Source: Ylistrum balloti
Taxonomy: Eukaryota
NCBI RefSeq assembly: GCF_031769215.1
Contig: NW_026782024.1
Coordinates: 620,001-684,000, forward strand
DNA length: 64,000 bases
Reading direction: 5' to 3'
This document shows positions 130-63,492 of the stretch, piece after piece; within the stretch, counting starts at the first letter, position 1, and every line of letters starts with the position of its first letter. The notes beneath the pieces were generated by a model. It was not told the origin of the DNA. It saw nothing but the letters and a program-made list of their open reading frames with translations, and searched no databases. Made by a program: the position numbers and the translations under genes.

Positions 130-2290
130 CTGTTTCGAGTCTAAATCCACAAGAGCAAGCCGAGGACTCAGCTAGGCAGTTTTTCTGAAGGTCACAATTT
201 AGGTTGCTGGCCTCATTTCTCAACTGACAGAGAATGAAATTGGTTTCTCGATTTCCAAAGTACTTAATAATATCAGTTGTTTTTGTGTTAAGGTTTTGGA
301 CAGGTGTTATAATTTGTTTTAAACTGATAAGTAGAACGAATATTTTGAAGATCCCAAGCTATGTTATTAATTTCATTAAACATGGATGGGAAGAAGCTAC
401 TTTAATAGTTGACAGTTCGACAGAGAGGAGAATCAAATAATCTAATAGATCTAAAGGGATATCTATCAAATGTGGGGTCATGAAGATAAGATTCAATAAT
501 TTCTTTCAAGTAGTATGGAGATTGATCATTCATGATTTTATACGTCAGCATCATTTTATGCTGCTTTCTCCTACTATTCAAGGAACCCAACCTATTCTTT
601 ATACAAGTTATTGTGGTAGGTGACTTTACGCAGTCCTGTTATTATTCTTGTCGCCTCTAATTGCACTGATTCTAAGAGATCTTTTGAATTTCGTGAACAA
701 TTATCCCAGACAACATCAGTATATAAGTATTGGCCTAATATATGATATATTTATTGTACTTAATGAATGTCTGTCCAATTTATACTTCATTATTCTTAAC
801 ACATTAATTCTTTTATAGGCCTTTTGATAAATGAATGTCAGACCGAGATGTTTATGTATTCGACTGACAGTAACAGGTTCATCATAAAAATATACATTTG
901 GGTGATGGATATTCAAATTTTTTTAGAGAAAATGACAGATTCAGTTTTGTTTGGATTAGATTTCATGTTTCATCTATTAGCCCAGAGTTGAATATTGCTG
1001 ATAAGTTGTGTAAGTTCAATTGGATCATTATCTTTTACAGCATACAGGGTAGCGAACAGTTTAATTACATTAGAAACACAATCAACAATATCATTAATAT
1101 AAAGTAAAAACAATTATGGACCGAGCCCTGTGGTACCCCTGCACCAACAGACTTAGACGTGGATAAATATCCCAGTTAAGACTCTTTTTTTCTATCATCT
1201 AAAACATTCCTAAACCAGCAGTCAAAATAATAATTAGATAAATTTCGTAATTTACATGCATCACTTAATTTTAGAATAGCGTCAAGTACATGTGCATTTT
1301 CTGAACCGTGCCAGTATTTGAGTGAAACTTAAACGTGACACAAAGTAATTTCCTTTTGATGCCGTATACTTGAAGTTTATACAATAATCCTCCATGCCAG
1401 ACTCTATCAAATGCCTTGCTTATGTCACAAAAAACAAACCTGAATTCTTAACCTTGGTCTTAACATTGTACAATAGTGTGATGTACTGAAAGAAGTTGAT
1501 TTACTGCAGAGTCCTTAGGCATAAAACCAGATTAATGTTTTGAAATAACTTCATGATAGCTAGATAATTAAACATGTATTTAGATATATTTTTTTCTATA
1601 ATCTTACTAAAACATGAAGTTATAGAGATTGGTCTGTAATTAGATATTTCATTTGTTAAACCTTTTCCTTTATAAATGGCATTAATATTGGCAGTTTTCT
1701 AGCTAAGGGGGATAACTCTTGTTTGTAGTGTTTTGTTATATAGCAAAGTTATAGGAAGAGAAATAGAATGTTGAAGTTCCTTGATTATCTTTGGTACCAT
1801 ACCATCAGGCCCAGCTGGTTTAGTACTATTTAAGAGAAACAATTGATCACACATCTTGATGTGTTATTGATATGTTTTCTAAAGACTGCGGACAGTTAAT
1901 TTCTATATCAGGGACAGGTTCAATTTTCAAAACAGTTTTGGCAATTTCCACCAACTAAATGAGAAAGTATCTTTATTAGCTAACAATTTATGCATATTTT
2001 CTAGATAATTACTCTTGGCCTCCCTAATTTTACTTATGACTTCATTCCTGTTATTTCTATAGTTTTCCCAGTGGCATGGTAAGTTACTAGACCTTGTTTT
2101 TCTATGTACCCTATTTCTTTGTCTAATTTTAGTTATTATGTCTTGTGTCATCCACTTTTTATCTCTAGGTCTTACTGTAATATTTCTACTAGGAATACAT
2201 TCAGATATCTGTTGATTGATAGCATCACAAAGAGTATTATTAAATTCATTACTGTCTTGCAATTCTGAGAGGCTTGTTTTCGAGTTATAT
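130..2290 (-). mobile_element. Decayed, 5'-truncated non-LTR retrotransposon (CR1/L2-like LINE ORF2: linker, RT domain, C-terminal region) inside an SLC6 intron
   Basis: Minus-strand translations give EFRFVFCDISKAFDRVWHGGLLYKLQVYGI (~1335-1445), GAGVPQGS (~1120-1150), SRIHKHLGLTF, MKYKLDRHSLSTINISYIRPILIY, KLMLTYKIMN..PYYL and the CIPSRNITVRPRDKKWMT..IRQRNR linker; many stops and frameshifts. Ends approximate. Confidence 0.9.
1222..1330 (-). repeat. ~110-bp fragment of the retrozyme-family repeat inserted into the LINE RT
   Basis: Matches ~3400-3510 (TTTACATxCATCACTTAA..CACATGTG..TTTTCTGAACCGTGCCA.TATTTGAGT.AACTTAAACGTG) and splits the LINE reading YGIKRKLL / WFRN. Confidence 0.75.
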
Positions 2291-2566
2291 AAAGATTGTA
2301 TTGTTAAACAACAAAAGATTCACTAACAGTGCAATTACTGATTATGAAATTGTTGTGGAAACCGATAACATTGAACAATAAACAGTTACCATGGGACTTT
2401 TCTAAAAAGGTCATTCAATCCTTATCTAAATAGATACATTGTTGCTTGACACTTTTGGACACCAGAGTGATCAGGATACAGAAATCAGAGAATTTGTGAG
2501 GACAACATAACGAGTTTTATGTTAAACATTAGTTATGAGAGCGCTTGCCGAAGTTATTAATCCTAC

Positions 2567-5500
2567 CGGAGACAGTTGCCATGGAACTTGTGAAAACTGG
2601 CCAAAGTGATTATTCCACCCCATGTCGGTCCAAGAGAGTAAAACACTTGTAATGCTGCTTCCAGCCATACCTAGAAAAATGACATTATAAATATGTTATT
2701 GTTTAAAACAAAACAACTGTTTTTGGCAATTTCAATTACTGGCAGATTTCCCCCATTTGTTTATTTATTTACTTATTTTTATTCTCTTTTTTTCCCTTTA
2801 TTTGTCTTGTTCAATCCACGTTTGTAATCTCGCATCCATTTTCAGTAACATACCTGTTACTCCTACGTTTGCTAATCTGAAGGAAGTCTCAAGAATAATT
2901 GCATTCATTTTTTATATTTTCGCCACTCAGTATAGTGAAAGGTCACGTCAATCGAAATGTTGTTTTTCACGGCAATAAAAGATACCTCTTTTAATGCTTT
3001 TAGATAATAATTAGTAAAATTTAACATTGTATCACCAATGACCAAAGAGATCGAATGCTTCTTTTTATAAACTACACTTATCAAAAAGCCTGAAGCAGAA
3101 TAAAACAAAAGGCCCACAGGCAGTTAAAATGGTTATTATTTATCATTACCTTCTTGTACAACACACCTGTACCAAAGATTATACAAAAGACACACACATG
3201 AATAGCATATTTGCATTATTAAGAGTGAGATACAGTAGAGCCACACAATAAATTAAACTGCATCATACAGCTGTTTCGTCATTCTAGGGCTCCTCAGTGA
3301 TGCTAAGGGCCTAAATTTGAAGCCTAGGGGCGAGTAAGGAAAATTCAATGTGATCAAAAGAAAAGTCAAAATCTAGACGGGGAGGTGCAGCAGCCCCACG
3401 ATAAGATACATTTCATAATTTACATACATCACTTAACTTTATAATAGCGTATAGCACATGTGTATTTTCTGAACCGTGCCACTATTTGAGTAAACTTAAA
3501 CGTGGCAAACAGGTTACGGCAAACCTCGGGGACTTTGAGTCCACCAACAGTGTCTACCACCTTCTATCTTTAAGACTGTACAAAAGATACACAAGTGAAT
3601 AGCACCTTTCCATTATTAGGAGTGAGATACAGTTGAGCCAAACAATGAATTGAACTGCATCATACAACTGTTTTGTACTTCTATGACTCGTCAGTGATGC
3701 TAAGGCCTTAGAGTTTGAAGCACAGGAGTCGACTAAGTAAAATGAAAAGTGATCAACAAAAAAGTCGAAATCTAGACGTGAGGTGCAGCAGCCCCATAAT
3801 TAGATTATCAAATTTCATGATCATGTTTAACACCAAGAAAAGATCCTAACACTTATCCGTGGACGATGGCATAACGTAAAACTGACTTATGTCTCCCAAT
3901 AATGTTCATACCTCTTTTCATATCCAAACAAATAGTAAAAGATAAAACGGGAAACAACGCTTGCGTGCATACATCATTTTGGATTTTTATTTTCTCATTA
4001 CACAGTAACAGATTACTTATTCTCCATACTACGATTTATTTTTCTAATATTACTTCTTTTTCATTTTCTCAAGTTTTTATATCCAAATATGATGCTCATC
4101 ATTCGCCGTGTTCTTAAATGCAAGAAAATCATAAAAGTACGTTAAATGATATGCGTGTTTACAGATATGACGCAATGAACTATCATTTTAACAATAACAT
4201 ATTTGACAAGTTGACAAGGTTTCCTTTCATAATAACAAATACCCATACCCATTTCCATGATAACCTGAAAATTTACACCTGAATAGATATTTCAGAAGTA
4301 TTGTAATAAATGTTCATTGATTATATTACGGTATGACAGAAATTACACTTTCAGCTTTAACTCACGCGGTGAATATTTTGGTGAAATACGTCAAAATATT
4401 AGCCACACTCGTGAAAAGTATCTGACATGGCTGAATACACTGTTAGATATCGTTTTTATAACATTGATTCGTGACAGCAATTACTAGTAAAGATATATCA
4501 TTTGATAGAAGTACCTGGAAATGGAGAAGTCTAGAGAAGTCAGGTGTGAGGTACAGTAGAACTCCATCTAATGAACCAGCCAAACATAGACTCCGCACCA
4601 GTATCACCAACAGCAGAACGAACGGTGCAGTGGCAGTCACATAAATGACCTAAACAGTGATGAATGTTGAAATATCAATAGAAGTAAACCTCTTCGAAAA
4701 TTACATTGAAAATAAAAGAACAAAGTAAGCGAATTCTTGTTTTAAATATCATGATATCTGTTTTAAAGGAGCAGACAATAATCACATTATTTTTGGTTGA
4801 CACTATAACCTAAATGTTATATTTGAATTTTATTTTTCATGTTTGACTTTGCCAGAGAAGTGATCACTTTTCATATTTTGATATTTCATTCGTAATTAGT
4901 AATTATGGTGCTTGTGCCTTCCATTCTTTTTCAGCAGGTGTTTCTTGAATGTTATTTCTTGTCTAACTATTTTTCAATTATGGATATCAAATGGCCTTTT
5001 CTATCCTACAATATTTATAATGTTATCAAAACTAAGATATATACTACAAATAATAGCATATTTTTTTCTGCTAATACTGCTGTAATTTGCTTATAACTAA
5101 AATTCACGTCATCGCTAAAACATAAACAAATCAATTTGAAACATTCAAATCGATTTAATTACTTGGAACGTTCAATGCCATTACCTTCCCAGCAGAATGT
5201 ACCCCTTTTATTATGCTAAGGAATATAGATGCAAAAGAGAAAAACAAAGCCAGTATGATATGCCACTGCGGGATTCCCCAGTCGTCTATTCCTCTTGATG
5301 CGTTTAATAGCTTGTATCTATAACATGTAAAAGATTGATATTAGCTGGCTTAGAGAATGCTGAATATTCATATCTTGATCAAGCTGATACATAATCCGAT
5401 CCGACCGGATCATATCTAACCCGTGATTAGTAAAATTTTCACATTATCACTTCACAGTTTACCATCTAGCAATATCAAGTTCTTAAAAAAAATCACGTTA

Positions 5501-8350: not shown

Positions 8351-9488
8351 CTGAAAGGATAAAGAAACGCAGGGTAATATTTATTTCGATATTTTGAAAA
8401 AATAAAGTGAAACTTTGTGGATTGAGTAATTAGGTCATATTACACCTTGTCATGTATCGAAAATTTAGTCACGGTACAGTGCGCAGCTCTGGTAAATGGA
8501 GGAATGAAAAAACAAGAATCTCATGCACCGTGTTGTTCTGGTCTCATGCAGCGTTGGTCAAGTCACTCTTCGTTAGTCATTATACAGACCAACTGCTTCC
8601 CTAAAATTAATTTGAGAATTTGATTCGTTTTAAGAATGGTACGACTCACAGATGTTCAGAGGGGTCAGGCCATTCAGATGCTGATGCAAGGACAGCTGCA
8701 AAATCAGGTTGCTAGGCACTTTGGTGTTAATGTTTCCACCATAGAACGTCTTGTAAGACGTCTTCGGGAAACTGGGCGATTGGCCGATCGACCTAGGTCA
8801 GGACGTCCGCAGGTTTGGGGGCGGTTCAGTAATGGTGTGGGGAGGAATCTCACACGGGTTAAAATCACAATTGGTTGTTATTGATGGCAATTTAACAGCA
8901 GCTAAGTATAGAGATGAGATCCTCCGACCCCAATGTTATCCCTTTCTTACAGCAGCATAATCTAACCCTCCAGCAGGATAATGCTAGGCCCCACCTAGCA
9001 AGGATTTGCCAAGTCTTTCTGGCCAACAACAACATTCAACCACTAGATTGGCCGCCATATAGCCCTGATTTGTCCCCGATCGAGCATCTTTGGAACCAGG
9101 TGGATAGACAGGTTCGAAAGCGCCAGCCACCCCCTGCTATTCGGGAGCAGTTGACCAGAGCTCTAATTGAAGAGTGGGACAACATCCCCATAAGACGGAT
9201 TAACGCTCTCATAAACTTTATGACCAGAAGAATAAGGGCCGTGACCACAGCAAACGGCGGACACACAAGATATTGATGACTCAGTTCAATTTCAATTTCA
9301 AAATCCTATGGGTCCATTCAACTTAATCGTTAGTACCTCTTAACTAATTGTCAGATGCAAAATACAGACTTTGGAAATGTTTAAGCTTTAATTTATCTGT
9401 AAGTATACAAAATTTCGTTTTAAATGAAGCCCGATATCATACTTAATTTCTGGTTTAAAGTTCACCCTGCGTTTCTTTATCCTTTTAG
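8351..9488 (+). mobile_element. Tc1/mariner (DD34E) DNA transposon, internally deleted, non-autonomous
   Basis: 25-bp TIRs CTGAAAGGATAAAGAAACGCAGGGT (8351-8375) and its inverse at 9464-9488 with 1 mismatch; TA on both sides. Confidence 0.95.
8636..9276 (+). pseudogene. Tc1 transposase pseudogene
   Basis: N-terminal HTH (VARHFGVNVSTIERL..GRLADRPRSGRP) joins directly at ~8808 to RFGGGSVMVWGGIS; then QQDNARPH..WPPYSPDLSPIEHLW with D and E 34 residues apart. The second HTH and first catalytic Asp region are deleted, and there is a frameshift near 8930. Confidence 0.92.
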
Positions 9489-11129: not shown

Positions 11130-11983
11130 TTAAATGTCATACAGAATAGTTCGTTGGCCAAGCACACACGGTATGACGATATTGACGATGTCTGTGAAGA
11201 CAACCAATCCGAACACAACTGTTAACACCCCAATCCCTATATAACCCATAAAGGTAGCGCTAACTCTATCGTCTGAGGCCGATGTGATTCGTCTCTTTGC
11301 GGAGGACAATGTCTTCTTATCAAGCTTCAATTCCGCTGTTATATTCTTAGTGAGTTCCAGAATAATTTCCAGGTTCGCTACTGATGATAGTTGATTACTG
11401 ACTGTTTTCTGACAATCGGTACACGAGCATGACACGCCAGTTGTTAATGTCTGCGAGCTCTGTGTGGTTTCTTTTGGAATAGTGGATGCTATGTCCGTTG
11501 TCGACGATGTTTCCTTCGTGGGTCCTTCAAAAGGACAAAACATTTTTTCTTTGTATACAAAAACCGGCTTTATTTCAAGAATTATTATATCGCTCTGTAA
11601 TATGAATGAAAAGGTTTCATATATTACTATATACACATTATATACAGACAACTAAAGGCATGTACTATTAATCGTAAAACTGATTTTCTTACCTCCTTGG
11701 CACTCAAAGGTAACGTTGAGATACTTTTCAACATCTGGACACGAATCCTCGAACACGGTAACAGAGGAAAGGATCTCACAGGTATTGGACCCCTCGCAGT
11801 ACTCAAAGATTACTTGATAAGTTTCAGGTGTCACACATGACGTTACAGTTGTATTACCGCCGCACGGTGAAGCATCCGTTCGTCCAAAGTTGGCGTCGAT
11901 CACATGGATTGAAAATCTGCTGGGACATTCCATTGGGACATAATCACCCTCACAGGCGATCAGACTGGTCGCAGCCTCTGTCA
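11130..11983 (-). CDS. SUEL/galactose-rhamnose-type lectin domain + Ser/Thr stalk + C-terminal transmembrane protein, copy A (last two exons; start not identified)
   Basis: Exon 11983-11693 (ACEG..MECP..ANFGR..C..SC..C.G.N.C..DSCP.VEKYL.V.FEC) splices in phase 1 to exon 11524-11130 (T/S-rich stalk, CSCTDC, LKLDKKTLSSAKRRITSASDDRVSA, hydrophobic GYIGIGVLTVVFGLVVF, short tail). Confidence 0.8.
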
Positions 11984-12547
11984 CTGGATATTTAAAAATA
12001 AAATATGATTGTAACTTTTTTAAGCAATACACAGAGAAAATCTCACATTGATAGTAAAAGCTAACTGCATTGATGTGGATATCTTTTAATTTTTATCGAA
12101 CTTTTCAAAGATTTACATTCCTTTATCCTTGTTCCAGTGTTTACAAATCTTAGCTGATTTGACATCCAGGAGCCTATTCCCAACACCACGATTTCCGTTG
12201 AAGATGCTGACACTGGACTTGCAGCACATGGTTATGAGAAATACTGGTTGATAAAGACTATGGGGAAGTTTTATGTTGGTTATTAATGATCTCATTAGGA
12301 AATGTTCTATATTATGATGCGATATGCTGTGTGGAATGTTCATAAGGACGTCTCCTGTTTTCCCCAACGTTAAAAATATTTTCACTTGAGAACGTGGCGG
12401 CTGCCACAAATCGAGCAGAAGACTCTTATCTTTCCGTAACACATGGTCTGATTCTCATACCTGGTTTTGTTCTGCAATTTTGAATGGTCCCGTGTAAAAT
12501 TTTCATTCCTTCATATTTTGACCTCGATTCATCGATTCTGATTTGCA

Positions 12548-15020: not shown

Positions 15021-16151
15021 ATTAGGCTGAGAAATGATGTATTTTATGCTTTCTTGAATTTCGTAAATAGTGCTTTAAATCAGCAGAGCATCCCTACATG
15101 GTCATCCATCACTTTATCCTTCATAGTATAGAAAAATAAAACGTGTAGTCCGTTTCTCCAACAACGCAATTATTGTTTAATCCGTATGGAAACGAGGTTA
15201 AAACGAAATTAAGTTCTCGTGGGACTATAAAAGTATAAAAAAAGTGTGATGAGCTTTGTTGCTAACAACATGCACACCAAATTAAAAGACAGCTAAACCA
15301 TTTCTTTAAAATAAAAAGCTCTACTATTCCTTAACGCTTTAGCATGTTTTAAGATTTTGTCTATAACGTCACAAGGGGAATTATTTCTTAAGCACTGGAA
15401 ATTGAACTAAATTTAGCAAAAAAAATATTCTTTAGCAAGGAACTATCATTTCTTAAATTTCAAATTTGGTCTCTAATATTATTTCAAAATGGGAATTGTT
15501 TATTAAATAAATGATAGGGTTTTGACCCATTGAAATAGAATGGCAGACCCCAATGATAAACTTAGGTAAAAGTTGGCTTTAATATGGCGATAGTTCACCT
15601 GCAAAACATCTGTATTATGAGAAAGTATTTCTGAAACAAATAAAGTTAATTGTTTCCTAGACTATATACCAAATTTTAAGTTCAATATACTGTACATATG
15701 TAGGCCTAACACGATGATCTTGATGCAAAATACGCAGTCTCATAAATACAAAAGTCTGGTTTGTGGACAGGTGCTTACTTTTTTTTCCAGAATTTGTCTT
15801 TAATCTCAGTAAGCCTCTGATAGGGACCGACGGACGTATTATGCACCCGCTAGGGCGCCCTTGTTTGATAGCATTTGACAGAAACCTAGCAACGTCAAGC
15901 TTTACATTTATATACAACTATTAATAATGCATTATTCTTTCCGTTGAAAATTCCGATAGCAAGAAATTGTTAAAAATTGTGCCAGTTCCACTGAGATGAC
16001 TATTTGGGAGAAACGTTTTTAAGCAACAATGCTGTAATTTTTCAGCCTCGTAATCATGTTTTTCCTTGACAACGCCAACTATTTCTGATTCATTTTTGGC
16101 TTAATTCAGGAAGATGTGTCTATCGTCAGATGTCCGTTGTGGGCCGTTGTG

Positions 16152-23100: not shown

Positions 23101-26100
23101 TTATTCAAAACTGCATACACAATCGGTGCAATCAGGAACAAGAGACAAATACTTTAGCAAAGCCGTTGTAAAAAGTTTAGAATACAATACTTTAAATTAC
23201 ATTACCTTGATACCATTGATAGTTCGAGCTTCATAGGATTTCGTTATTTCGAACAATGAGGCTTTGTCGCTGTATGTATCAGTAATGTTCTTCATCCATG
23301 CCTCGATCTTGTAAACAGAAAGTTACCGAAAGTTGAATATTGGGTTTAAATCTTATTTCGATGTGGTGATGTAATATATGTATATAGGAAAAACGCTACC
23401 TCAATTTTGCATCAAGTACAAATGTTCACATGGATATTTCAAAATTTGATCAATTAACTGCTTACATTAGTTTAGAATTATAGTGTGTAGCACATATAAC
23501 CTTGGGTAAATTATTTCAGAATCGAATCTAAGCATACTACTAGGAATTCACACACTTCTTCTATAATTAGAATAGCTTATGGAAATGATTTGGAATTATT
23601 CATATACTCGTCAAATGACCTCTGTACAGTAAAAACATGTAAAATGCAGCATTATTATCACATCAGTGAATAGGAACACGAAAATTACCCTTTGTATTAC
23701 GACTGTTTATTTTACAGTTTGTTTATACTAGTTTATCTAAATCAGTCTTTACAGTATTCATAAATTTAATTCTGAACTGACACCCAACCAAAAGGGTTGT
23801 CATGGGATAAAAATCCGATTAAAAATGAAATTTACCTCGCTTAGTGTGTGATACTGTGAGTAATCGAAGTCGGCTTCCACGTCATAGGTGACGTATTTCT
23901 GAGCGTCTATCAACTTCTGCACGTCATCTATGATAACCGTTGGAAAGATTCCCCACAAATTGAAGGAAGCATATAAACGCTGAAACACCTCTGGGGACAT
24001 GCTCATATCCACAGGCACACCGACCTGGCGAGGGGCGAGCCAGAAATCCACCTGCAAATCGAAACACATGAAAGATTTACAATAACATCATCACAGCAGC
24101 GCCAAACAGTAATTTAAACTGCATCATACATATGTTTCGTCCTTCTAGGATTCGTCTGTGATGCTAAGATCTTAGGTTTTAAACCTAGGAGGCAACTGAG
24201 GGAAACTAAAATCAAAATTATGATGAGGAGGTTCAATAGCAGTACATTTCTGAATTTTCACATTTCTGATAATTTGATAAGAACGGAAAATACATGTGTA
24301 TATTCTGTGCCACACCAATATTCAAATAGATTAGAACATGACATGCAGGTTACGGCAAACATCGGGAACTAAAAGTTCACTGCAGAAAATGCGATACCGG
24401 AAGATACCATGTTAAAATTTTCCCGAATCAATTCAATCATATTGTTTTCATTATTTATAACAGTTTGAAGAGTACTTGCAATAAACCCTATACAAACAAG
24501 AACTTAAGGATCTATATGTAGATCTGACGTACCTTGTCATGACCCGTCTGTCCCTGCAACGCTTTCAAGGCCAGTAAATGTTCATACTTCTGAGGAACTA
24601 CCCTTACCACTTTGTATCTACATAGAAAAGAGGTCTACTTTATTATTATGTCAAACATTCGTTTACTGATAGAGTAAATTTCCTAAAACTGCTTGAAATG
24701 AATATGGTAAACATATTGTAGTATGTAAAATCACCATTGAATGTTTTAAGAACTGTGCTTAGAAATCTGTTTTGGCAGAGTAGGTCTACAGCGGTACTTA
24801 AAATTAGTAATGATAGCGATAAATTTCTCTTAACTGGACAGACATATTTACATTTTGTTCCATTCTGAGATTTTAATATCTCACCCTATAGAGTTGAGGA
24901 TTGATTTTCCTTTCATATTTATAATTTCAACGATGCAATGTAGCAATAAACACACCCACCTAGGAAGGTCGACAGAGTGAGACAAAAATAATCATTCACC
25001 CCCTGGTTTGTGAGGATAGGGTTGAACTCAACGAGGCAAGCTTCGTGTTTGCCCAATAAATCATCTTTCCTCTGGGTTTCAGATTATACTATCTTCAAGG
25101 GGATGAAAGATTCCATTATAATCTTAACACTATCAAAACATCAGAGTAGAAAAGAACTTCATACCGTGATTAATCTATGATCAAATCAACCATGTGGCTC
25201 AATGCAGATAGGAAAAAATGCGAAGCATTGCTAACAAAATTGATAGTGTAAATTCTCAAAGTCATTAATGATAGAGACATAACTGTGCCTGTAAACGCAA
25301 CTAAGGTTTGAGTTCCCAATTTATATCAAAGCTATAACTGAAACAGAATGTGAATATCAACAATCACTGAAGTTTATATTGGTGTCTCGGTTATTGTTTT
25401 CTTCGTTTATTTATCTATAAGTTTATCACTCCATACATTTCGTTCATATATATATATATATATATTTTAATGCAATTTCAAAGACATAAGTACAGTTTAC
25501 GACTGACATTTGTAACCATTGGTGTGAATATATACGGACCGATTCACTTACAGTAAAGAAAACAATAAAGACGAATCATGTGAGCATTGTTGAAGAAGTA
25601 TACAATATTATACTATGTTGACGTTGACATGTAGATTTCCGTCAACTCAGCTAAATCAACAGTGGATATTTATCATATATAAGTCAAATGCACATTTAAA
25701 TGTCCATTTGATATTAGATACAGCACAACTGTATTAAATTGTGAATTAAATCAATCCCTAGCTGTTTCATCCTAGGAATCGAAAGTATGGTTTTGTGGTA
25801 AAGGCCTAAATTGTTGACAACTAAGAGACAACTGTGGAAATATTGGCCGAAAGACTTGGCAAAACCAGATGGTGAGGTGCATTAGTTCATAAATGAATTC
25901 CATTACTTTCAATATTGAATGTCATCGTCGAGTACATGTGTATATTAACGATATCGCCACCTGTGCTATCGTTTTGTTGATGCAAATATAACCATATACC
26001 TTTTACATTTGTAATTTAAAAGTTTGATCGATAATGCAGCAGTGCGAGATATATTGAAAATTTTCAAACCATCCATTTTATAAACGAATTAATTTCAGTC

Positions 26101-33684: not shown

Positions 33685-36600
33685 TTAGATGTCATACAGA
33701 ATAGTTCGTTGGCCAAGCACACACGGTATGACGATATTGACGATGTCTGTGAAGACCACCAGCCCGAACACAACAGTCAACAGCCCAATTCCTATATAAC
33801 CCATGAAGGTAGCGCTAACTCTATAGTCTGAGGCCGATGTGATTCGTCTCTTTGCGGATGACAGTGTTTTCTTATCAAGCTTCAATTCCGCTGCTATATT
33901 CTTAGTGAGTTCCAGAATAATTTCCAGGTTCGCTACTGATGATAGCTGATTACTGACTGTTTTCTGGCAATCGGTACACGAGCATGACACGCCAGTTGTT
34001 AATGTCTGCGAGCTCTGTGTGGTTTCTTTTGGGATAGTGGATGTTATGTCCGTTGTCGACGATGTTTCCTTCGTAGGTCCTTCAAAAAGAGAAAACTCTT
34101 TTTCTTTTGCATACAAAAGCCGACTTTATTTCAAGAAGTATTATATCGCTCTGTAATATGAATGGAAAGGTTTCATATATCACTATATACATTTATCAAA
34201 TAGAAGACTAAATAAATAACCAAGACAGTTGATACAGATTATGTTCATATTTATTTTGAGGGATGTAATATTTTATATAGATGGCGAATATAGGCCAATG
34301 ACTTCAACTGAATCAGCATAAGAATGGAGGAACTGGGAGAAAATTCCTCCAAAAATAGCTGATGTTAACTAGTAAGTGAGGCATTAATATTGAATTCAGG
34401 AAATAATAAGCAATCTGTTGTCAGAGTGCATATTTATTTTGAGGGATGTAATATTTTATATAGATGGCGAATATAGGCCAATGGCTTCAACTGAATCAGC
34501 ATAAGAATGGAGGAAACTGGGTACAGAAAATTCCTCCAAAAATAGCTGATGTTAACTAGTAAGTGAGGCATTAATATTGAATTCAGGAAATAATAAGCAA
34601 TCTGTTGTCAGAGTGCAAAAAACTGAGCCAAATTGCAATACTGTTGAAACAATCGATAATCGGATAAGGAACAATTGAAAAACAGTTTGCCAGTTTTCCA
34701 AGAATTGTATAAATTTTACAATGAGAATTGATAACATGGTGGTTACTTTTAAAAGAACCCATAACTACTTGTTTGTATTCACAACAGCATTGCAAAATTT
34801 CCATGAATGAATAATACCAAAATATAACCACTTTAGATCAACAACTTCAAATCAACTATCGATTGTGGAATTTGATAATCCCTTGATTTTAAACAGATAT
34901 GTTGCAATGATTTATAAAATGATAATTGGCATAATACTATTACACTAACTCAGCTGTTGGTATTCTAATGTACCTTTTGAAAGCCCTTGATTCCCAACTT
35001 CCCATTTCCTTAATATTCTCATCTGAGAAACCTTTGTAAGCTGCATAAGTTGCAGCCCCAACCCTGAAGGAGTGTGATTTGTAACTACCTTCCACCTCTA
35101 AAGCGTTTAATGATTTCATTAGAACTGCAGAGAACTGGTACCGTGTTACTGCAGAACTGTCAAGGTGACAAAAGAAGGTACCAGGACAGGGCCTACGTAT
35201 GTCAAGATACTGTCTAACTAAAGTGTATTGACAGATATCTGAAGCATTCCTTCTTAAGGCTATAACAACCCCTGCCCCTGCCTGGTCAGTTTTAGAATGA
35301 GGAAGCCTTATCTCTACCACCCCCTCCTTATCGAACACTTTAACATTGTGTACCAATAAAGCATGCCCGGCAATGCCCTGCTTGTCGACAACTAAATCTC
35401 TTACACCTAGAAAGGCAGAAAATGCCACGGAAAAAATTGCAGAAAATAATACTGCTTCATATGTGGAGCTACAAACAACAGGCAAAATATGAATAACCCT
35501 GCGTAACAGTTCTGGTGATAATGGAAGATGTATATCTGAACGTGTATCCAGTCTTGACATGCCTAGCAACATTATCTTTACAAGAAAAAACTGTGTCACA
35601 TCTGAAACATTAAGCAATTTACACTTAAACCCTAATCCTGCGACGTATGATTTAACTGTAGCAGGAGCAATACCATTTGAAGATAAGAATGCAATAAACT
35701 CGACAACTTGCTGCTGCGTGGGTGGCCAAGTCAAACCCAAATTAAACTTCTGCCGAAAATCTTCAAAGCGAGCTAACCCTGTGTTGTAAACCTGTCTAGA
35801 GTTTGATGAAATAGAGGCTCTCAAAATTCTCTCAATTTCATGCTGTAGATGAGCTGTTTGAATGCTGCTGGTATTACTTCCGGAAGCCGAGCCGCATGCG
35901 GAGCTAAAGACCGGAAACGATCCCACTGCTTGCGAGAGATGGCATCAGCAATAGAATTAGTATTTCCTGGGATATGCAATGCCCTGAATTGTATGTTATG
36001 AAGCATGCACCGCAATACCAAGGGACGGACAAGACCCATGATTCTACAAGACCTAGAGGTTTTATTGTTCAAAATTGTAACCAAGCTTTGATTATCAGTA
36101 TGCAATAGGATTTTTTTATTCTGTAATTCTGCCCCCTAAATAAATGTTGACATGACTGTAGGCACAAGTTCCAGAAAAGTAATGTCACGAATAACATCAG
36201 ATACAATCCACTGTTTAGGCCAGGAAATAAATGCCCATTTCCACCTTTACTTCCATCCCCACCAGCACTATCAGTATAGAGCTCCAGCTAAGAGTTGTCC
36301 ACCCAGAATCTCTCCGGGAAACTACAATAGCCATTGTAAAGCTCAAGAAACATAAGCAAGACCTGAATGTCCTCTCTCATGTCATGTGTAACCCTAATAA
36401 AATGATGACTCTTCTTCACCCCTGACATAGCATTATAAAAAACGCCGAATAAATGCCCGTGCGGCTGGAAGATAAAACAGGAACAAAAGATAACCCAAAC
36501 TTGATAAACAATAAATGCCAGCCAATGCTGATATTATGACTGTAATCTAAAGGACCTTGCATGCACTTGTGTTCAGATTATTTTTTTTTAAATAAAATAT

Positions 36601-47900: not shown

Positions 47901-50900
47901 CCGGGAGTGAATTCCTCCTTCCATCCAGAATGCCGGCCTGGGATCAGGACTGGTGCTGGTGCTGATCTACATTGACATCAACCATGCAAATGAACGACAT
48001 AGGACACTATTTTAGTTATATATAACATACATTTATTACTAATTTACTCTAGGAACTGAAAAATGATTTTTTTTAATGCTTGAGTCCTATATCTAACAAC
48101 TTTTCAAATTTTATGCTTCGATAGAAGCATGTTTGGAATTTATGTCATAGTAAAAAACTGCCCTTGTTTTTAATTGGCAGTTAGATGTTTAGTAATTGAA
48201 CATCTGACTTCGAAACGCCACTTTAGTCCGAGTGTTGGAGAGGTCATTTCCGGGATGATATATCCACTCTACATTTCATTGGTTTGTTGTTATAAGTATA
48301 CCTGTATCAAGACCTGTTATATATGAAATGGATCATCGGTGACATGTGAAATTCCTTAGTTCAATGAACTTTTCATTCGTTACTTACATCGAAACCAATA
48401 TGGATAGCTTTCCATCAATTTCCCTATTTTTCTATTTCTAGATAGCAAAACACCGCATCCACAACTTTAAAAGTCGTAGTTGATTCGACAGTCTATGGTA
48501 TGTTTCGATTATCACAGTTTTACTGCAAGAATTCAACTGACAAACGTCGGGTTTTAACAGATGCAGGTTGATGAAAATTGTGGAGAAGCTTACGGTCGTC
48601 ACAGTTATCTCAGTGAGTCCTAATTTATTCCTTCGTGCGATATGACACTGGGTGTGTTTAATGCTAGTTAGTTTGCCTGTTAGTTCCGTTCTTTTATACC
48701 TAGTTCTCATTTGAGAACGTGACATTACTTACTTGGATTAACCAAGGTTTACATAGCGGGTGTCGTCGATGATGCAGACGACGCTTACTCTTCCGGAAAT
48801 TCCTATCTTATTCTCTTTGTTCTTCTTCACGAGTCTCCGTGTAAATCTTCCTTATGTTCATGTTTAGCCTTTGTTTTATTGACTTTGAGTTTGGATTATG
48901 ATAATGTTGACATGTTTTGGTATTTTCTTGTTTCTTATTGATATTTTTTTTCTACTTACACTATGTCTAAACAAAGGAATTTAGATAACCAACGAATTAA
49001 AAGAAAATAAATCTTCAACGAAAATTAATAATCATATTAGTGACGATACTTTTAACCACTCATCATATCTAATACTTCATATGTTGATAAACACATCATG
49101 AAATTCAGATATTATAATATTCATTATTCAAAACTGCATACACAATCGGTACATAGGTACAAGAGACAAATATTTTAGCAAAGCCGTTGTAAAAAGTTTA
49201 GAACTTTAAATTACATTACCTTGATACCATTGATAGTTCGAGCTTCATAGGATTTCGTTATTTCGAACAATGAGGCTTTGTCGGTGTATGTATCAGTAAT
49301 GTTCTTCATCCATGCCTCGATCTTGTAAACAGAAAGTTACCGAAAGTTGAATAGTGGGTTTTAATCTTATTTCGATGTGGTGATGTAATATATGTATATA
49401 GGAAAAACGCTACCTCAATTTTGCATCAAGTTCAAATGTTCACATGGATATTTCAAAATGAGATCAATTAACTGCTTACATTAGTTTAGAATTATAGTGT
49501 GTAGCACATATAACCTTGGGAAAATTATTTCAGAATCGAATCTAAGCATACTACTAGGAATTCACACACTTCTTCTATAATTAGAATAGCTTATGGAAAT
49601 GATTTGGAATTATTAATATACTCGTCAAATGACCTCTGTACAGTAAAAACATGTAAAATGCAGCATTATTATCACATCAATGAATAGGAACTCGAAAATT
49701 ACCCTTTGTATTACGACTGTTTATTTTACAGTTTGTTTATACTAGTTTATCTAGATCAGTCTTTACAGTATTCATGAATTTAATTCTGAACTGACACCAA
49801 ACCAAAAGGGTTTTCATGGGATAAAAATCCGATTAAAAATGAAATTTACCTCGCTTAGTGTGTGATACTGTGAGTAATCGAAATCGGCTTCCACGTCATA
49901 GTTGACGTGTTTCTGAGCGTCTATCAACTTCTGCACGTCATCTATGATAACCGTTGGAAAGATTCCCCACAAACTGAAGGAAGCATATAAACGCTGGAAC
50001 ACTTCTGGGGACATGCTCATATCCACAGGCACACCGACCTGGCGAGGGGCGAGCCAGAAATCCACCTGCAAATCGAAACACATGAAAGATTTACAAAATA
50101 CACACAAATGAATAACATTATGACAGTAGAGCCAAACATTAATTTAAACTGCATCAACATATGTTTCGTCCTTCTAAGATTCGTCTGTGATGATAAGATC
50201 TTAGATTTTAAATATAGGAGGCAACTGAGGAAAACCCAAATTGATCGAAACAAATATCAAAATTTGTACATTTCTGAATTTTCATATATCTGATAATTTG
50301 ATAAGAACGGAAAGTACATGTGTATATTCTGTGCCATGTCAATATTCAAATAGATTAGAACATGACATGCAGGTTACGGCAAACCTCGGGAACTAAACGT
50401 CCACTACAGAAAATACGATACCGGAAGATACCATGTTAAACTTATCTCGAATCAATTCAATCATACTGTTTTCATTTGTGATTATAACAGTTTGAGGAGT
50501 ACTTGCAATAAACCCTATACAAACAAGAACTTGCTTCGTGATTTTTATATAGATCTGACGTACCTTGTCATGACCCGTCTGTCCCTGCAACGCTTTCAAG
50601 GCCAGTAAATGTTCATACTTCTGAGGAACTACCCTTACCACTTTGTATCTACATAGAAAAGAGGTCTACCGTGATTAATCTATGATCAAATCAACCATGT
50701 GGCTCAATGCAGATAGGAAAAAATCCGAAGCATTGCTAAAAAATTGATAGTGTAAATTCTCAAAGTCATTAATGATAGAGACATAACTGTGCCTGTAAAC
50801 GCAACTAAGGTTTGTGTTCCCAATATATATCAAACATAACGTTATGTGCTAATGTTGGAATCCAATGCAATGATACCACCGGCAAATGTATTGTGGACCA

Positions 50901-61608: not shown

Positions 61609-63492
61609 ATGGCTGAGAGTGATGGACTCACAGATAGCCCTGCTAGTGTCGACGATCAGGCTAAAGCTGCCGAAGGAAAACTGCGTCTCATCAAAGAAAG
61701 TCTCAAGTTCTATGACTCTAAAGGTTTGAAAACTCTCATCCTTGAGGAGAAATTGTCAGACCAATCTATATACTGGGAAGTTGCTACACAACTAACCAAG
61801 CACCTGACAGCAGAAAATTTCGAAAAGTATACAGTGTTCTTTGAGTCTTGCCAGAGATGTCTGAACTATTTGATTAGAACTGGCAATGCTAAAGAACTGT
61901 TGTTAGCATTGTTGGAGCAAACAGACACCTTCAATGATGACATCAAGTGGAAAGCTCTTTTAGATGGAATACAACAGACCCTGCTGAAGCTGCCGTCAAA
62001 AAGATACCACTCATTGGACATCGCCTTGTCCACAATACATGCCCACATCAAAAGTCTGTCTGAGCCAACAGACCATGAGTTGGAGGGGGAGGAAAACAAA
62101 CTACTAGAACTGGACCCTGAGGTCCAGCGAATCACAGATGTCTTACTAAGCTTTCTTGCGTTTCTTGAACCTTTTGTGTCGGAAGTATCCCTAAATAACA
62201 CAACTGCAGACAGAGAGAAAGGCAAACATCAGATAGCAATGTTACGTAGAAATCTGCTTCTGATACTGAACCATCCTCTGGTCTTTTTGGATCTGGCTTT
62301 CTGTGAGAAGCAGCAAGAGAGGAAAGCTAAAGGATACGCTCGAATGTGTATCGAAAAAACCATGAACCTTCTCTGTGAATTATGTCCCAACCTGCTAAAA
62401 ACAATTACAGACTGTCTGGAAGATATACAACTATCAAAACTGAATATGAAAAAAAGTGTGAAAAAAAAGGAGGATGATGATAATGAGGAAAATTCTGATT
62501 TTGTTAATAATTGGGCAGAGTGTAAGGATGAAGGTTTGATTCCCCTTCCTAGTCTGGCCTGTCTGTCCTATCTGGTGTTGGTCGAGGGGCTTGGACAGGA
62601 ACGCTTCCCAGCCATTTACACGCATAAATATCTTCTGGAGTTTAATTTACAGTTTGTGTTACTGCTGTTTCAAAGACAGGAATCGTTGATTGTCAGTAAG
62701 GGTGTACGACTTCTGGAGGTCCTTACCCGAGGAATCACACCAGCAACATTCACCATGGAGGACCTGGATAATCCTAACTATACCAAGACCTTGAATTGTC
62801 TCATAACTGTCATGATCCGCTGTCCTGTGAAAGAGATTCGAGGAACAGCAGTTCAGATTTTTTCTATCTACATTAAAATGTTTACACTGCAAGCTCGTGT
62901 TCAGATATATGAGATGATTTTCAACACATGTTCTCATGCCGGGGTGATTGGGTACAGCATTCAGCTGGTGAAGGACCAAATAGACACTACATTGAAACAG
63001 GAAATCCCAGACACTACATTCCTGGGTCTAAATCTAAAACGAATGTTAAAGTTTGTGTCCCAACTTGAGGAAGGAGCGGAGTCTGATCTACTGGAGTCAT
63101 CAGATCGAGTCATTCCTACCCTGAACCTGATTCGATACCTAATTCTCCGGGATCCAATATCGGTCAATGTTACAGGGATATGGTCCTATTATGAAGACAT
63201 AGAGAAAGACTTCTTTGGTCCTTTGAGACTGGCCCTAGATTTTTCTAAAAGTCATTATAAATTAGAGTTGCAGAACTTCAGAGAAGGGAAAGCGACAGTG
63301 GAGAAAGGAATGGAGCTCGGTGTCGACATCAGTGTGGCGGGGATGCCCATGCCTAAGGTTCCACGCAGTCAGCAGATTCAGATTGTAGAGTCTGCACTCA
63401 ATACTTTTGACTTGATTGATAGTCTCCTCAGTAGGATTGTAGAGCTAGCTGATTTCCAGCTGAAAGCTGCAAAACATGATGCTAAATCCTGA
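61609..63492 (+). CDS. GLMN: Glomulin (FKBP-associated protein; RBX1/CRL inhibitor), 627 aa, single coding exon
   Basis: GNAKELLLALLE, FLEPFVSEV, MIRCPVKEIR, HAGVIGYSIQLVKDQI, ESDLLESSDRVIPTLNLIRYLILRD..N.TGIW, LDFSKSHYKLEL, SALNTFDLIDSLLSRI match the glomulin family; acceptor TTTTCTTGCAG| at 61552 in the 5' UTR; AATAAA at ~63578. Confidence 0.93.
   Translation: MAESDGLTDSPASVDDQAKAAEGKLRLIKESLKFYDSKGLKTLILEEKLSDQSIYWEVATQLTKHLTAENFEKYTVFFESCQRCLNYLIRTGNAKELLLALLEQTDTFNDDIKWKALLDGIQQTLLKLPSKRYHSLDIALSTIHAHIKSLSEPTDHELEGEENKLLELDPEVQRITDVLLSFLAFLEPFVSEVSLNNTTADREKGKHQIAMLRRNLLLILNHPLVFLDLAFCEKQQERKAKGYARMCIEKTMNLLCELCPNLLKTITDCLEDIQLSKLNMKKSVKKKEDDDNEENSDFVNNWAECKDEGLIPLPSLACLSYLVLVEGLGQERFPAIYTHKYLLEFNLQFVLLLFQRQESLIVSKGVRLLEVLTRGITPATFTMEDLDNPNYTKTLNCLITVMIRCPVKEIRGTAVQIFSIYIKMFTLQARVQIYEMIFNTCSHAGVIGYSIQLVKDQIDTTLKQEIPDTTFLGLNLKRMLKFVSQLEEGAESDLLESSDRVIPTLNLIRYLILRDPISVNVTGIWSYYEDIEKDFFGPLRLALDFSKSHYKLELQNFREGKATVEKGMELGVDISVAGMPMPKVPRSQQIQIVESALNTFDLIDSLLSRIVELADFQLKAAKHDAKS

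What the first reader, a model, noticed from the sequence alone, without database searches (positions are those of the whole stretch)
3175..3830. Tandem hammerhead-ribozyme repeat (retrozyme-like, ~397-nt monomer) hidden in an SLC6 intron, in the sense orientation
Seen: two type I hammerhead folds 397 bp apart on the minus strand. HHR1 (3260-3303) has helix I GCATCA/TGATGC, CUGAGGA, GAAA, a 2-bp helix III closed by a palindrome, and a GUA triplet. Established: minimal type I hammerheads with palindromic helix III occur in Penelope-like elements and in metazoan retrozymes, which are tandem repeats whose transcripts self-cleave into monomers that circularise. Inference: a transcript through this array, including the SLC6 pre-mRNA itself, could be cut at 3266/3265 and 3663/3662 and release a ~397-nt RNA. 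HHR2 carries G12A and HHR1 has a mismatched helix II, so this locus may be a decayed copy of a family active elsewhere.
Basis: partly seen in the sequence, partly recalled or inferred. Interest (0 to 1): 0.85.

Follow-up and report, generated by a model that had tools for sequence, protein, structure and literature searches.

The report
Decayed hammerhead retrozyme copy in intron
This is an old, mutated 1.65-copy insertion of a very abundant small mobile repeat that carries a self-cutting hammerhead ribozyme; it sits in an intron of a transporter gene in a bivalve genome, is a known kind of element, and at this site looks dead.

Summary
On the minus strand, 3830-3175 is a head-to-tail repeat with a 397-nt period and 84% identity. 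It consists of a 5'-truncated unit (3830-3572) followed by a full unit (3571-3175). Each unit carries a type I hammerhead motif with a 6-bp helix I, a 4-bp helix II and a 2-bp helix III closed by a palindromic loop. The array lies in the sense orientation in the intron between two SLC6/SNF exons (4649-4446 and 2670-2566).

It belongs to a very abundant genomic family. In a DNA run of the same species, summed contig depth over the ribozyme segment is about 87,000 against about 10 for single-copy flanks. The family's ribozyme sequence there has an intact core.

The local copies are decayed. HHR2 has G12A and only 2 of 4 helix II pairs. HHR1 keeps the core but has 2 of 4 helix II pairs and is predicted to misfold. 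The ribozymes have diverged as much as the rest of the unit, so nothing suggests they are under selection. Release of a 397-nt RNA from the SLC6 pre-mRNA is therefore unlikely. No RNA data could be obtained.

Best reading: a dead copy of a metazoan non-LTR retrozyme, a non-autonomous element probably dependent on Penelope-like elements. This is a new member of a known kind and of low interest. This scan had already noted many hammerhead repeats elsewhere in this genome.

The parts
3572..3830 (-). Upstream, 5'-truncated repeat unit (copy A); it covers about the 3' 65% of the 397-nt unit
   Evidence: Direct-repeat families D1-D3 with spacing 397-399. Alignments. Homology to the unit fades between about 3825 and 3845.
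3175..3571 (-). Full 397-nt repeat unit (copy B); GC 39%; longest ATG ORF in the array is 29 aa
   Evidence: It ends at ...TTTTGTATAATCTTT, the same 3' terminus as the independent copy at 24071/50085.
3657..3700 (-). HHR2, a dead hammerhead motif: G12A (AAAA in place of GAAA), helix II with 2 of 4 pairs, loop 3 AGUU
   Evidence: Sequence. Four mismatches to the family ribozyme. Broken pairs listed. No Rfam hit.
3260..3303 (-). HHR1, a hammerhead motif with a complete catalytic core but only 2 of 4 helix II pairs (C-A and C-U mismatches); loop 3 AGCU is palindromic
   Evidence: Rfam Hammerhead_1 at 19.3 bits, E 0.1, below the gathering score of 34. Three mismatches to the family ribozyme. Predicted misfold.
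3266..3662 (-). Notional 397-nt monomer between the two predicted cleavage sites (3663/3662 and 3266/3265)
   Evidence: Positions read. The fold is no more stable than shuffled sequence, z = -0.78.
4446..4649 (-). SLC6 (SNF family) exon upstream of the array
   Evidence: Pfam PF00209, E 2.3e-9, profile positions 208-252. Open frame shown.
2566..2670 (-). SLC6 (SNF family) exon downstream of the array
   Evidence: Pfam PF00209, E 9e-10, profile positions 250-283.
24071..24380 (-). Single-unit copy of a related subfamily with a dead ribozyme (CAGA core, A at 10.1); it lies in an intron of a procarboxypeptidase-like gene
   Evidence: 78% identical to unit B. The downstream exon matches Propep_M14, E 3.6e-10.
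50085..50404 (-). Paralogous copy of the 24-kb insertion, carried along by a segmental duplication; its ribozyme is also dead (CAGA core, one base lost next to the cleavage site)
   Evidence: About 90% identical to the 24-kb copy.
1233..1337 (-). 105-nt internal fragment of the unit, with no ribozyme, interrupting the reverse-transcriptase frame of a LINE-like relic
   Evidence: 88.6% identity to 3401-3504. Sequence. RVT_1 hit on 1447-1274.

Best explanation
The array is an old, neutrally decaying insertion of a non-coding, hammerhead-bearing retroelement of the metazoan non-LTR retrozyme kind. Such elements are small non-autonomous repeats thought to be mobilised by Penelope-like elements (PLEs).

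The insertion has the PLE-style partial-tandem shape: a 5'-truncated unit followed by one full 397-nt unit that ends at the family's fixed 3' terminus.

In intact family members the ribozyme has a helix III too short to be stable in a single copy. The 8-nt palindrome ACAGCUGU lets two copies pair into a double hammerhead. Multimeric transcripts would then be cut into unit-length RNAs, which in other animals are circularised by a host ligase.

At this locus that machinery is broken. HHR2 has lost the catalytic G12 and half of helix II, and HHR1 has lost half of helix II and is predicted to misfold. The SLC6 pre-mRNA most likely passes through uncut, and the array is removed with the intron.

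Shown here: the repeat structure, the motif anatomy, the intron position, family abundance with an intact family ribozyme in DNA, and the local mutations. Inferred: retrotransposition by PLE machinery, processing of family RNA into circles, and inactivity of the local copies.
For: Repeat structure:
- Period 397, 1.65 copies, 83.6% identity, K2P distance 0.186.
- GC 39% and no ORF longer than 29 aa.

Ribozyme architecture:
- Type I hammerhead with a 6-bp helix I, a 4-bp helix II and a 2-bp helix III with a palindromic tetraloop.
- This is the architecture described for canonical metazoan type I hammerheads that work as dimers in tandem repeats (PMC4209133).
- It also matches the cloned mussel retrozyme, whose repeats are 350-390 bp (PMC7229834 and its supplement).

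Family evidence from DNA run X1:
- Depth is flat at about 10 across exons and introns, but about 87,553 and 55,952 in the two bins that contain the ribozymes.
- 97% of the depth at 3677 carries the base that restores a helix II pair.
- The loose-end consensus reads GCAUCA-CUGACGA-GUCC-UAGAA-GGAC-GAAA-C-AGCU-G-UA-UGAUG, a complete core.
- For that family sequence the double hammerhead is the minimum-energy dimer, -33.3 kcal/mol.
- The subfamily at 24 kb has CAUAUG where the family has CAGCUG. Two changes have kept the palindrome.

Insertion shape:
- The same 3' terminus is followed by three different sequences: in the array interior, at the array's 3' flank, and at the 24/50-kb copy.
- PLEs and their non-autonomous derivatives typically insert as a 5'-truncated copy followed by a full copy (PMC8557442).

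Local decay:
- The HHR regions of copies A and B differ at 7 of 44 positions, the same rate as the whole unit, so no constraint is visible.
- No intact hammerhead exists anywhere in the 64-kb window.
Against: - No RNA data could be obtained. The only run returned behaves as DNA, so expression, cleavage and circles are untested even for the family.
- No PLE reverse transcriptase was found in the window, and similarity of the unit to a PLE pseudo-LTR could not be tested.
- No convincing target-site duplication is visible, and the 5' boundary is uncertain by about 20 nt.
- The 397-nt monomer is not unusually self-paired (z = -0.78), whereas active retrozyme RNAs are described as highly self-paired. 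Decay could explain this.
- Summed contig depth is not a true copy number, and most of the excess sits on the ribozyme module rather than on the whole unit.
Confidence: 0.8

Rival explanations
1. The tandem arose at the DNA level. A single dispersed hammerhead-bearing repeat inserted here, and part of it was later duplicated by replication slippage or unequal exchange. On this reading the 1.65-mer says nothing about how the element inserts.
For: - Only 1.65 copies are present, and the two are 16% diverged.
- Earlier notes of this scan on other DNA of this genome concluded that the 45-nt hammerhead arrays grew by DNA-level expansion (unchecked).
- X1 contigs show many head-to-tail ribozyme joints of that type (joints of 42 and 442 nt).
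Against: - The array ends exactly at the family's shared 3' terminus.
- It starts inside a unit, which is the shape PLE-type insertions produce.
- The unit junction continues seamlessly into the unit's 5' part.
Confidence: 0.13
2. The locus is still partly active. In a double-hammerhead fold, HHR1's intact core would pair in trans with HHR2's cleavage site and cut the SLC6 pre-mRNA once, at 3663/3662. Alternatively, HHR1 would cut in cis at 3266/3265.
For: - HHR1 keeps all core nucleotides, the G10.1-C11.1 pair, helix I and a palindromic helix III.
- The two helix III octamers can pair with each other, with probability about 0.22 in the transcript context.
Against: - HHR1's helix II has 2 of 4 pairs, and its core is predicted to be trapped in an alternative hairpin.
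- The double-hammerhead fold is 8.8 kcal/mol above the minimum-energy fold.
- Helices I and II have a probability of about 0 in context.
- The ribozyme shows no more conservation than its flanks.
- The G12A change in HHR2 removes a core nucleotide that is invariant in hammerheads (Rfam consensus; catalytic role from general knowledge, not tested here), so two cuts are not expected in either mode.
Confidence: 0.06
3. The hammerhead resemblance is a chance match inside an ordinary repeat.
For: The Rfam score of 19.3 bits is below the gathering score of 34, and the hit is not listed in either whole-window search.
Against: - Four motifs in the window lie within 3-13 mismatches of a family sequence with a perfect core, against 17 or more in shuffled windows.
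- The family ribozyme is intact and extremely abundant in DNA of the species.
- The two-base change in helix III preserves the palindrome.
Confidence: 0.01

Closest known systems
Metazoan non-LTR retrozymes (Cervera and de la Pena 2020, PMC7229834), especially those of the mussel Mytilus galloprovincialis
   Same: - Head-to-tail non-coding repeats of a few hundred bp (mussel 350-390 bp, here 397), with low GC and no LTR or ORF.
- One type I hammerhead per unit.
- The same ribozyme architecture as the cloned mussel unit: a 4-bp helix II with a 5-nt loop, and a helix III of C-palindromic tetraloop-G.
- Thousands of ribozyme copies per genome.
   Different: - The primary sequence differs. The cleavage triplet is GUA here and GUC in mussel; loop 3 is AGCU here and GCGC in mussel.
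- This locus has only 1.65 copies and is mutated.
- Expression and circular RNA, which were shown for mussel, are untested here.
Pseudo-LTRs and non-autonomous derivatives of Penelope-like elements (PMC4209133, PMC8557442, bioRxiv 10.64898/2026.07.22.740005)
   Same: - Partial-tandem insertion shape: a 5'-truncated copy followed by a full copy with a fixed 3' end.
- A hammerhead that needs dimerisation through a short palindromic helix III.
   Different: - There is no RT or GIY-YIG ORF between the repeats, and the unit is 397 nt rather than 3-4 kb.
- The ribozyme has the canonical 6-bp helix I and 4-bp helix II, not the PLE minimal variant with a long helix II and a short helix I.
- No sequence link to an autonomous PLE could be tested.
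Conserved intronic hammerheads of amniotes (Rfam Hammerhead_HH9 and HH10)
   Same: A hammerhead in the sense orientation inside an intron of a protein-coding gene.
   Different: - Those are single, highly conserved, active motifs with stable helices.
- This one is a repeat-family copy with no sign of constraint.
- It matches only Hammerhead_1, and weakly.
Amphibian satellite 2 and axolotl retrozyme hammerheads
   Same: Tandem-repeat hammerheads with a weak helix III and a palindromic loop, which cleave efficiently only as dimers (PMC7229834).
   Different: They occur in different taxa, with different sequences and long arrays that are experimentally shown to be active. Here there is a short, dead array.

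Membership tests
Metazoan non-LTR retrozyme | Head-to-tail repeats with a monomer of about 150-450 bp | tested here: met
   Period 397, 1.65 copies.
Metazoan non-LTR retrozyme | One type I hammerhead with a conserved core per unit | tested here: met
   Met at the family level: the family ribozyme in DNA run X1 has a complete core and helices. Locally, HHR1 has a full core but a broken helix II, and HHR2 has G12A.
Metazoan non-LTR retrozyme | Non-coding, low GC, no LTR, primer-binding site or polypurine tract | tested here: met
   GC 39%, longest ATG ORF 29 aa. The only repeats around the unit are the unit copies themselves.
Metazoan non-LTR retrozyme | Multicopy dispersed family in the genome | tested here: met
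   Three independent loci in 64 kb. Summed contig depth is about 5,500-87,000 over the unit against about 10 in the flanks. Depth is not an exact copy number.
Metazoan non-LTR retrozyme | Transcripts self-cleave and accumulate as unit-length linear and circular RNA | not testable with these tools
Folding predicts that the local copies are inactive.
Metazoan non-LTR retrozyme | Highly self-paired monomer RNA | tested here: not met
   For the local 397-nt monomer z = -0.78, and 21 of 100 shuffles fold at least as well. This was tested only on the decayed copy, not on an intact family member.
Autonomous Penelope-like element (pseudo-LTR pair) | RT plus GIY-YIG ORF between the two hammerhead-bearing repeats | tested here: not met
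   The ribozymes are 397 nt apart with no ORF longer than 29 aa.
Non-autonomous PLE derivative | Partial tandem (5'-truncated copy plus full copy) with a fixed 3' end | tested here: met
   the array starts inside a unit and ends at the terminus shared with the 24/50-kb copy. The criterion comes from PMC8557442. Only two independent insertions were available.
Non-autonomous PLE derivative | Sequence similarity of the 3' end to an autonomous PLE of the same genome | not testable with these tools
Amniote-type conserved intronic hammerhead (HH9/HH10) | Single-copy motif matching those Rfam models and conserved by selection | tested here: not met
   The only match is to Hammerhead_1 at 19.3 bits. 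It is a repeat-family member, and it has diverged as much as its flanks.
SINE (pol III-derived) | A head derived from tRNA, 5S or 7SL | tested here: not met
   ARAGORN finds nothing in the window, and Rfam shows no such hit in 3100-3900 at E up to 10.

The most novel reading that the evidence does not exclude
HHR1 keeps a complete catalytic core, and the two helix III octamers can still pair. The array might therefore form a hybrid double hammerhead in which HHR1's core cuts at HHR2's site. That would give a single, inefficient, possibly regulated cut in the SLC6 pre-mRNA intron: a domesticated intronic ribozyme in an invertebrate.
Probability: 0.04. Interest if true: 0.55.

Novelty: new member of a known kind. 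Interest (0 to 1): 0.2.

Why it matters
As a single locus it matters little. It is one dead copy among thousands and is most likely spliced out with its intron.

Its modest value lies in documenting a 397-nt hammerhead repeat family in a pectinid-type bivalve. The searchable literature describes no such elements for scallops.

It also gives a small clue about how animal retrozymes insert. A 5'-truncated unit is followed by a full unit, and the fixed 3' terminus is shared with an independent copy. That shape fits insertion by the machinery of Penelope-like elements, as a 2026 preprint proposes for vertebrates, better than insertion of arbitrary rolling-circle products.

Tried and rejected
- Rfam at gathering thresholds on the whole window found nothing. 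The whole-window E-value scan listed no hammerhead. Only the 801-nt scan gave the weak HHR1 hit.
- Tandem Repeats Finder found nothing; there are too few, too diverged copies.
- My first fuzzy-regex scan timed out and was replaced by a Hamming scan.
- RNA evidence could not be obtained. The look-up of sequencing runs returned one run of unknown kind. When laid, it behaved as genomic DNA of another individual, with flat depth of about 10 across exons and introns and contigs running through splice sites. It therefore gave family abundance and the family ribozyme sequence, but nothing on expression, cleavage ends or circles.
- Searching metagenome and viral contigs for the core plus helix II pattern gave 3 and 1 loci. 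These are unrelated microbial or phage-type hammerheads with a long helix III that happen to share helix II and loop 2, so I rejected them as relatives.
- A generic descriptor for intact hammerheads found none in the window.
- SINE reading: no tRNA-like head.
- I looked for a target-site duplication by eye. Only a weak GGTG/GGT match appears near uncertain boundaries, so I make no claim.
- The organism name (the scallop Ylistrum balloti) comes from an earlier scan note only. I did not verify it.

Full report
**What is there.** Read on the minus strand, 3830-3175 is a head-to-tail direct repeat. The repeat finder gives three collinear families with start-to-start spacing of 397-399 nt and 83-88% identity. 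A pairwise alignment gives 83.6% identity over 244 positions, K2P distance 0.186. The downstream unit (3571-3175) is a complete 397-nt unit. The upstream one (3830-3572) lacks roughly the first 35% of the unit. The array therefore holds 1.65 units, which is why Tandem Repeats Finder reports nothing. The unit has 39% GC and no ATG ORF longer than 29 aa.

**The ribozyme motifs.**
- HHR1 (3303-3260) reads GCAUCA CUGAGGA G-CCC-UAGAA-UGA-C GAAA C-AGCU-G UA UGAUGC.
- HHR2 (3700-3657) reads GCAUCA CUGACGA G-UCA-UAGAA-GUA-C AAAA C-AGUU-G UA UGAUGC.
- The predicted cleavage sites are 3266/3265 and 3663/3662, which are 397 nt apart.

**Is it more than chance?** Rfam alone would not establish this. Hammerhead_1 matches HHR1 at 19.3 bits, E 0.1 in an 801-nt search, below the gathering score of 34. 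It is not listed in either whole-window search, and HHR2 has no hit. The stronger evidence is family membership.
- A self-BLAST finds further copies of the unit at 24093-24370 and 50085-50394, and a fragment at 1233-1337.
- A DNA run of the same species, from another individual, gives flat contig depth of about 10 over exons and introns. The two bins holding the ribozymes reach 87,553 and 55,952. The bin 3334-3527 reaches 5,508, and the bin holding the 1.2-kb fragment reaches 1,754.
- The consensus of the contigs' loose ends spells an intact ribozyme: GCAUCA CUGACGA GUCC UAGAA GGAC GAAA C AGCU G UA UGAUG.
- At 3677, 97% of the depth carries the base that restores a helix II pair.
- Against that 44-nt family sequence, the window's four motifs have 3, 4, 4 and 13 mismatches. 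All four lie on the minus strand. The best match in each of 50 shuffled windows has 17 or more mismatches.

**Genomic context.** The minus strand carries SLC6/SNF exons at 8155-7922, 6166-5888, 5916-5551 and 4640-4443, matching Pfam PF00209 profile positions 1-252. The next exon is at 2670-2566, profile positions 250-283, E 9e-10.

**How intact family members should work.** The architecture is a 6-bp helix I, a 4-bp helix II, and a 2-bp helix III closed by a palindromic tetraloop.
- Cervera and de la Pena describe this architecture for canonical metazoan type I hammerheads. Helix III is too weak for a single copy, but two copies in a tandem transcript fold into an active dimer (PMC4209133).
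- Here ACAGCUGU is an 8-nt palindrome.
- Cofolding two copies of the family sequence gives the double hammerhead as the minimum-energy structure, -33.3 kcal/mol. The single-copy hammerhead fold (-7.8) is not the monomer's minimum-energy fold (-13.6).
- The subfamily at 24 kb has ACAUAUGU instead. Two substitutions have kept the palindrome. This is a small piece of covariation in favour of the dimer model.
- Mussel retrozymes are 350-390-bp repeats with the same ribozyme architecture, and they accumulate as circular RNA (PMC7229834).

By analogy, multimeric transcripts of intact family members would be cut to unit length and ligated by a host tRNA ligase. This step is inferred, not shown here.

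**Why this locus looks dead.**
- HHR2 has G12A, which changes a core nucleotide that is invariant in hammerheads, and only 2 of 4 helix II pairs.
- HHR1 keeps the core but also has only 2 of 4 helix II pairs (C-A and C-U mismatches).
- HHR1's predicted fold traps C3, U4, A6, N7 and G8 of the core in an alternative hairpin.
- The HHR2 x HHR1 double hammerhead lies 8.8 kcal/mol above the minimum-energy fold.
- In a 561-nt transcript context the probabilities of helices I and II are about 0. Only the trans helix III pairing persists, at about 0.22.
- In a double hammerhead each core acts on the other copy's cleavage site (geometry seen). HHR1's core would face the 3663/3662 site, and HHR2's dead core would face 3266/3265. 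In single-copy mode the reverse applies. In neither mode are both cuts expected, so release of a 397-nt RNA is unlikely.
- The two ribozymes differ at 7 of 44 positions, the same rate as the whole unit, so there is no sign of constraint.
- The 397-nt monomer is not unusually structured, z = -0.78.
- A generic descriptor finds no intact hammerhead anywhere in the window.

**How it got there.** The sequence ...TTTTGTAnAnTCTT(T) is followed by three different continuations. One is the next unit's 5' part, inside the array. One is unique intron sequence at 3175. One is unrelated intron sequence at the 24/50-kb copy. The family thus has a fixed 3' terminus. The array is a 5'-truncated unit followed by a full unit, the partial-tandem shape typical of Penelope-like elements and their non-autonomous derivatives (PMC8557442). 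[quoted passage not shown] That preprint also shows that intronic copies are common in Xenopus, at 42-44% of copies, even if depleted relative to intergenic DNA. Only two independent insertions were available here, no target-site duplication is convincing, and no Penelope-like RT is in the window. A DNA-level duplication of part of a single insertion therefore remains a rival.

**What could not be done.** No RNA run was available; the single run returned is DNA-like. Expression, cleavage ends and circular RNA are therefore untested, even for the family. Searches of metagenome and viral contigs for the core plus helix II returned only unrelated microbial or phage hammerheads. The searchable literature has nothing on hammerheads in scallops or on bivalve satellite DNA. 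Earlier notes of this scan report many hammerhead repeats, including 45-nt arrays, on other DNA of this genome, and name the species as the scallop Ylistrum balloti. I did not verify the species. The head-to-tail ribozyme joints (42 and 442 nt) agree with those notes.

**Verdict.** It is not supported on cleavage of the SLC6 pre-mRNA. This is a new, dead member of a known kind of element and of low interest.

Noticed in passing
window 1233-1337 (-), inside the LINE-like relic at about 2319-970 (-): A 105-nt internal piece of the retrozyme-like unit, 88.6% identical to 3401-3504 and without a ribozyme, interrupts the reverse-transcriptase reading frame of a LINE-like element. It sits between ...YGIKRKLL and DCWFRNVL.... 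It could be a template-switch product or a nested fragment insertion.
   Followed up: partly
window 24071-24380 (-) and 50085-50404 (-): Single-unit copies of a related subfamily fill most of the roughly 470-nt intron between two propeptide exons of procarboxypeptidase-like genes (Propep_M14). They are in the sense orientation and end 20 nt upstream of the splice acceptor. Both have a dead CAGA core.
   Followed up: partly
window about 11-24 kb versus about 38-50 kb: A tandem segmental duplication with a period of about 26-27 kb. Paired features include SUEL-lectin ORFs at 11652-12032 and 38750-39160, identical weak Rfam hits at 15671 and 42725, and carboxypeptidase exons with their intron at 24 kb and 50 kb (about 91% identity overall, with exons nearly identical).
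   Followed up: partly
window 8636-9276 (+): A Tc1/mariner-like transposase relic (DDE_3, E 1e-11, preceded by a helix-turn-helix-like ORF) just upstream of the first SLC6 exon, on the opposite strand.
   Followed up: no
window 34940-35926 (-): A 328-aa ORF with a weak tyrosine-recombinase (Phage_integrase) match, E 6.6e-5. It lies within the stretch that another first-stage note calls a YR retroelement.
   Followed up: no
window 61609-63492 (+): An uninterrupted 627-aa ORF matching the YAP/Alf4/glomulin family (PF08568, E 4.5e-25). It is an apparently intronless gene or retrocopy.
   Followed up: no
L001 758-782, L002 1346-1370 (same contig as L004), L003 11262-11286: Metagenome and viral contigs carry hammerhead motifs whose core, helix II and loop 2 are letter-identical to the bivalve family (CUGAUGA GUCC UAGAA GGAC GAAAC). 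They have a long helix III or a different context, so the resemblance looks like convergence and not kinship.
   Followed up: partly
window 3228-3318 (-) versus the rest of the unit: In DNA run X1 the excess depth is very uneven: about 87,000 over the ribozyme module, about 5,500 over the middle of the unit, and only about 60 over 3722-3915. The ribozyme module is therefore shared by far more repeats, including 45-nt arrays, than the full 397-nt unit.
   Followed up: partly
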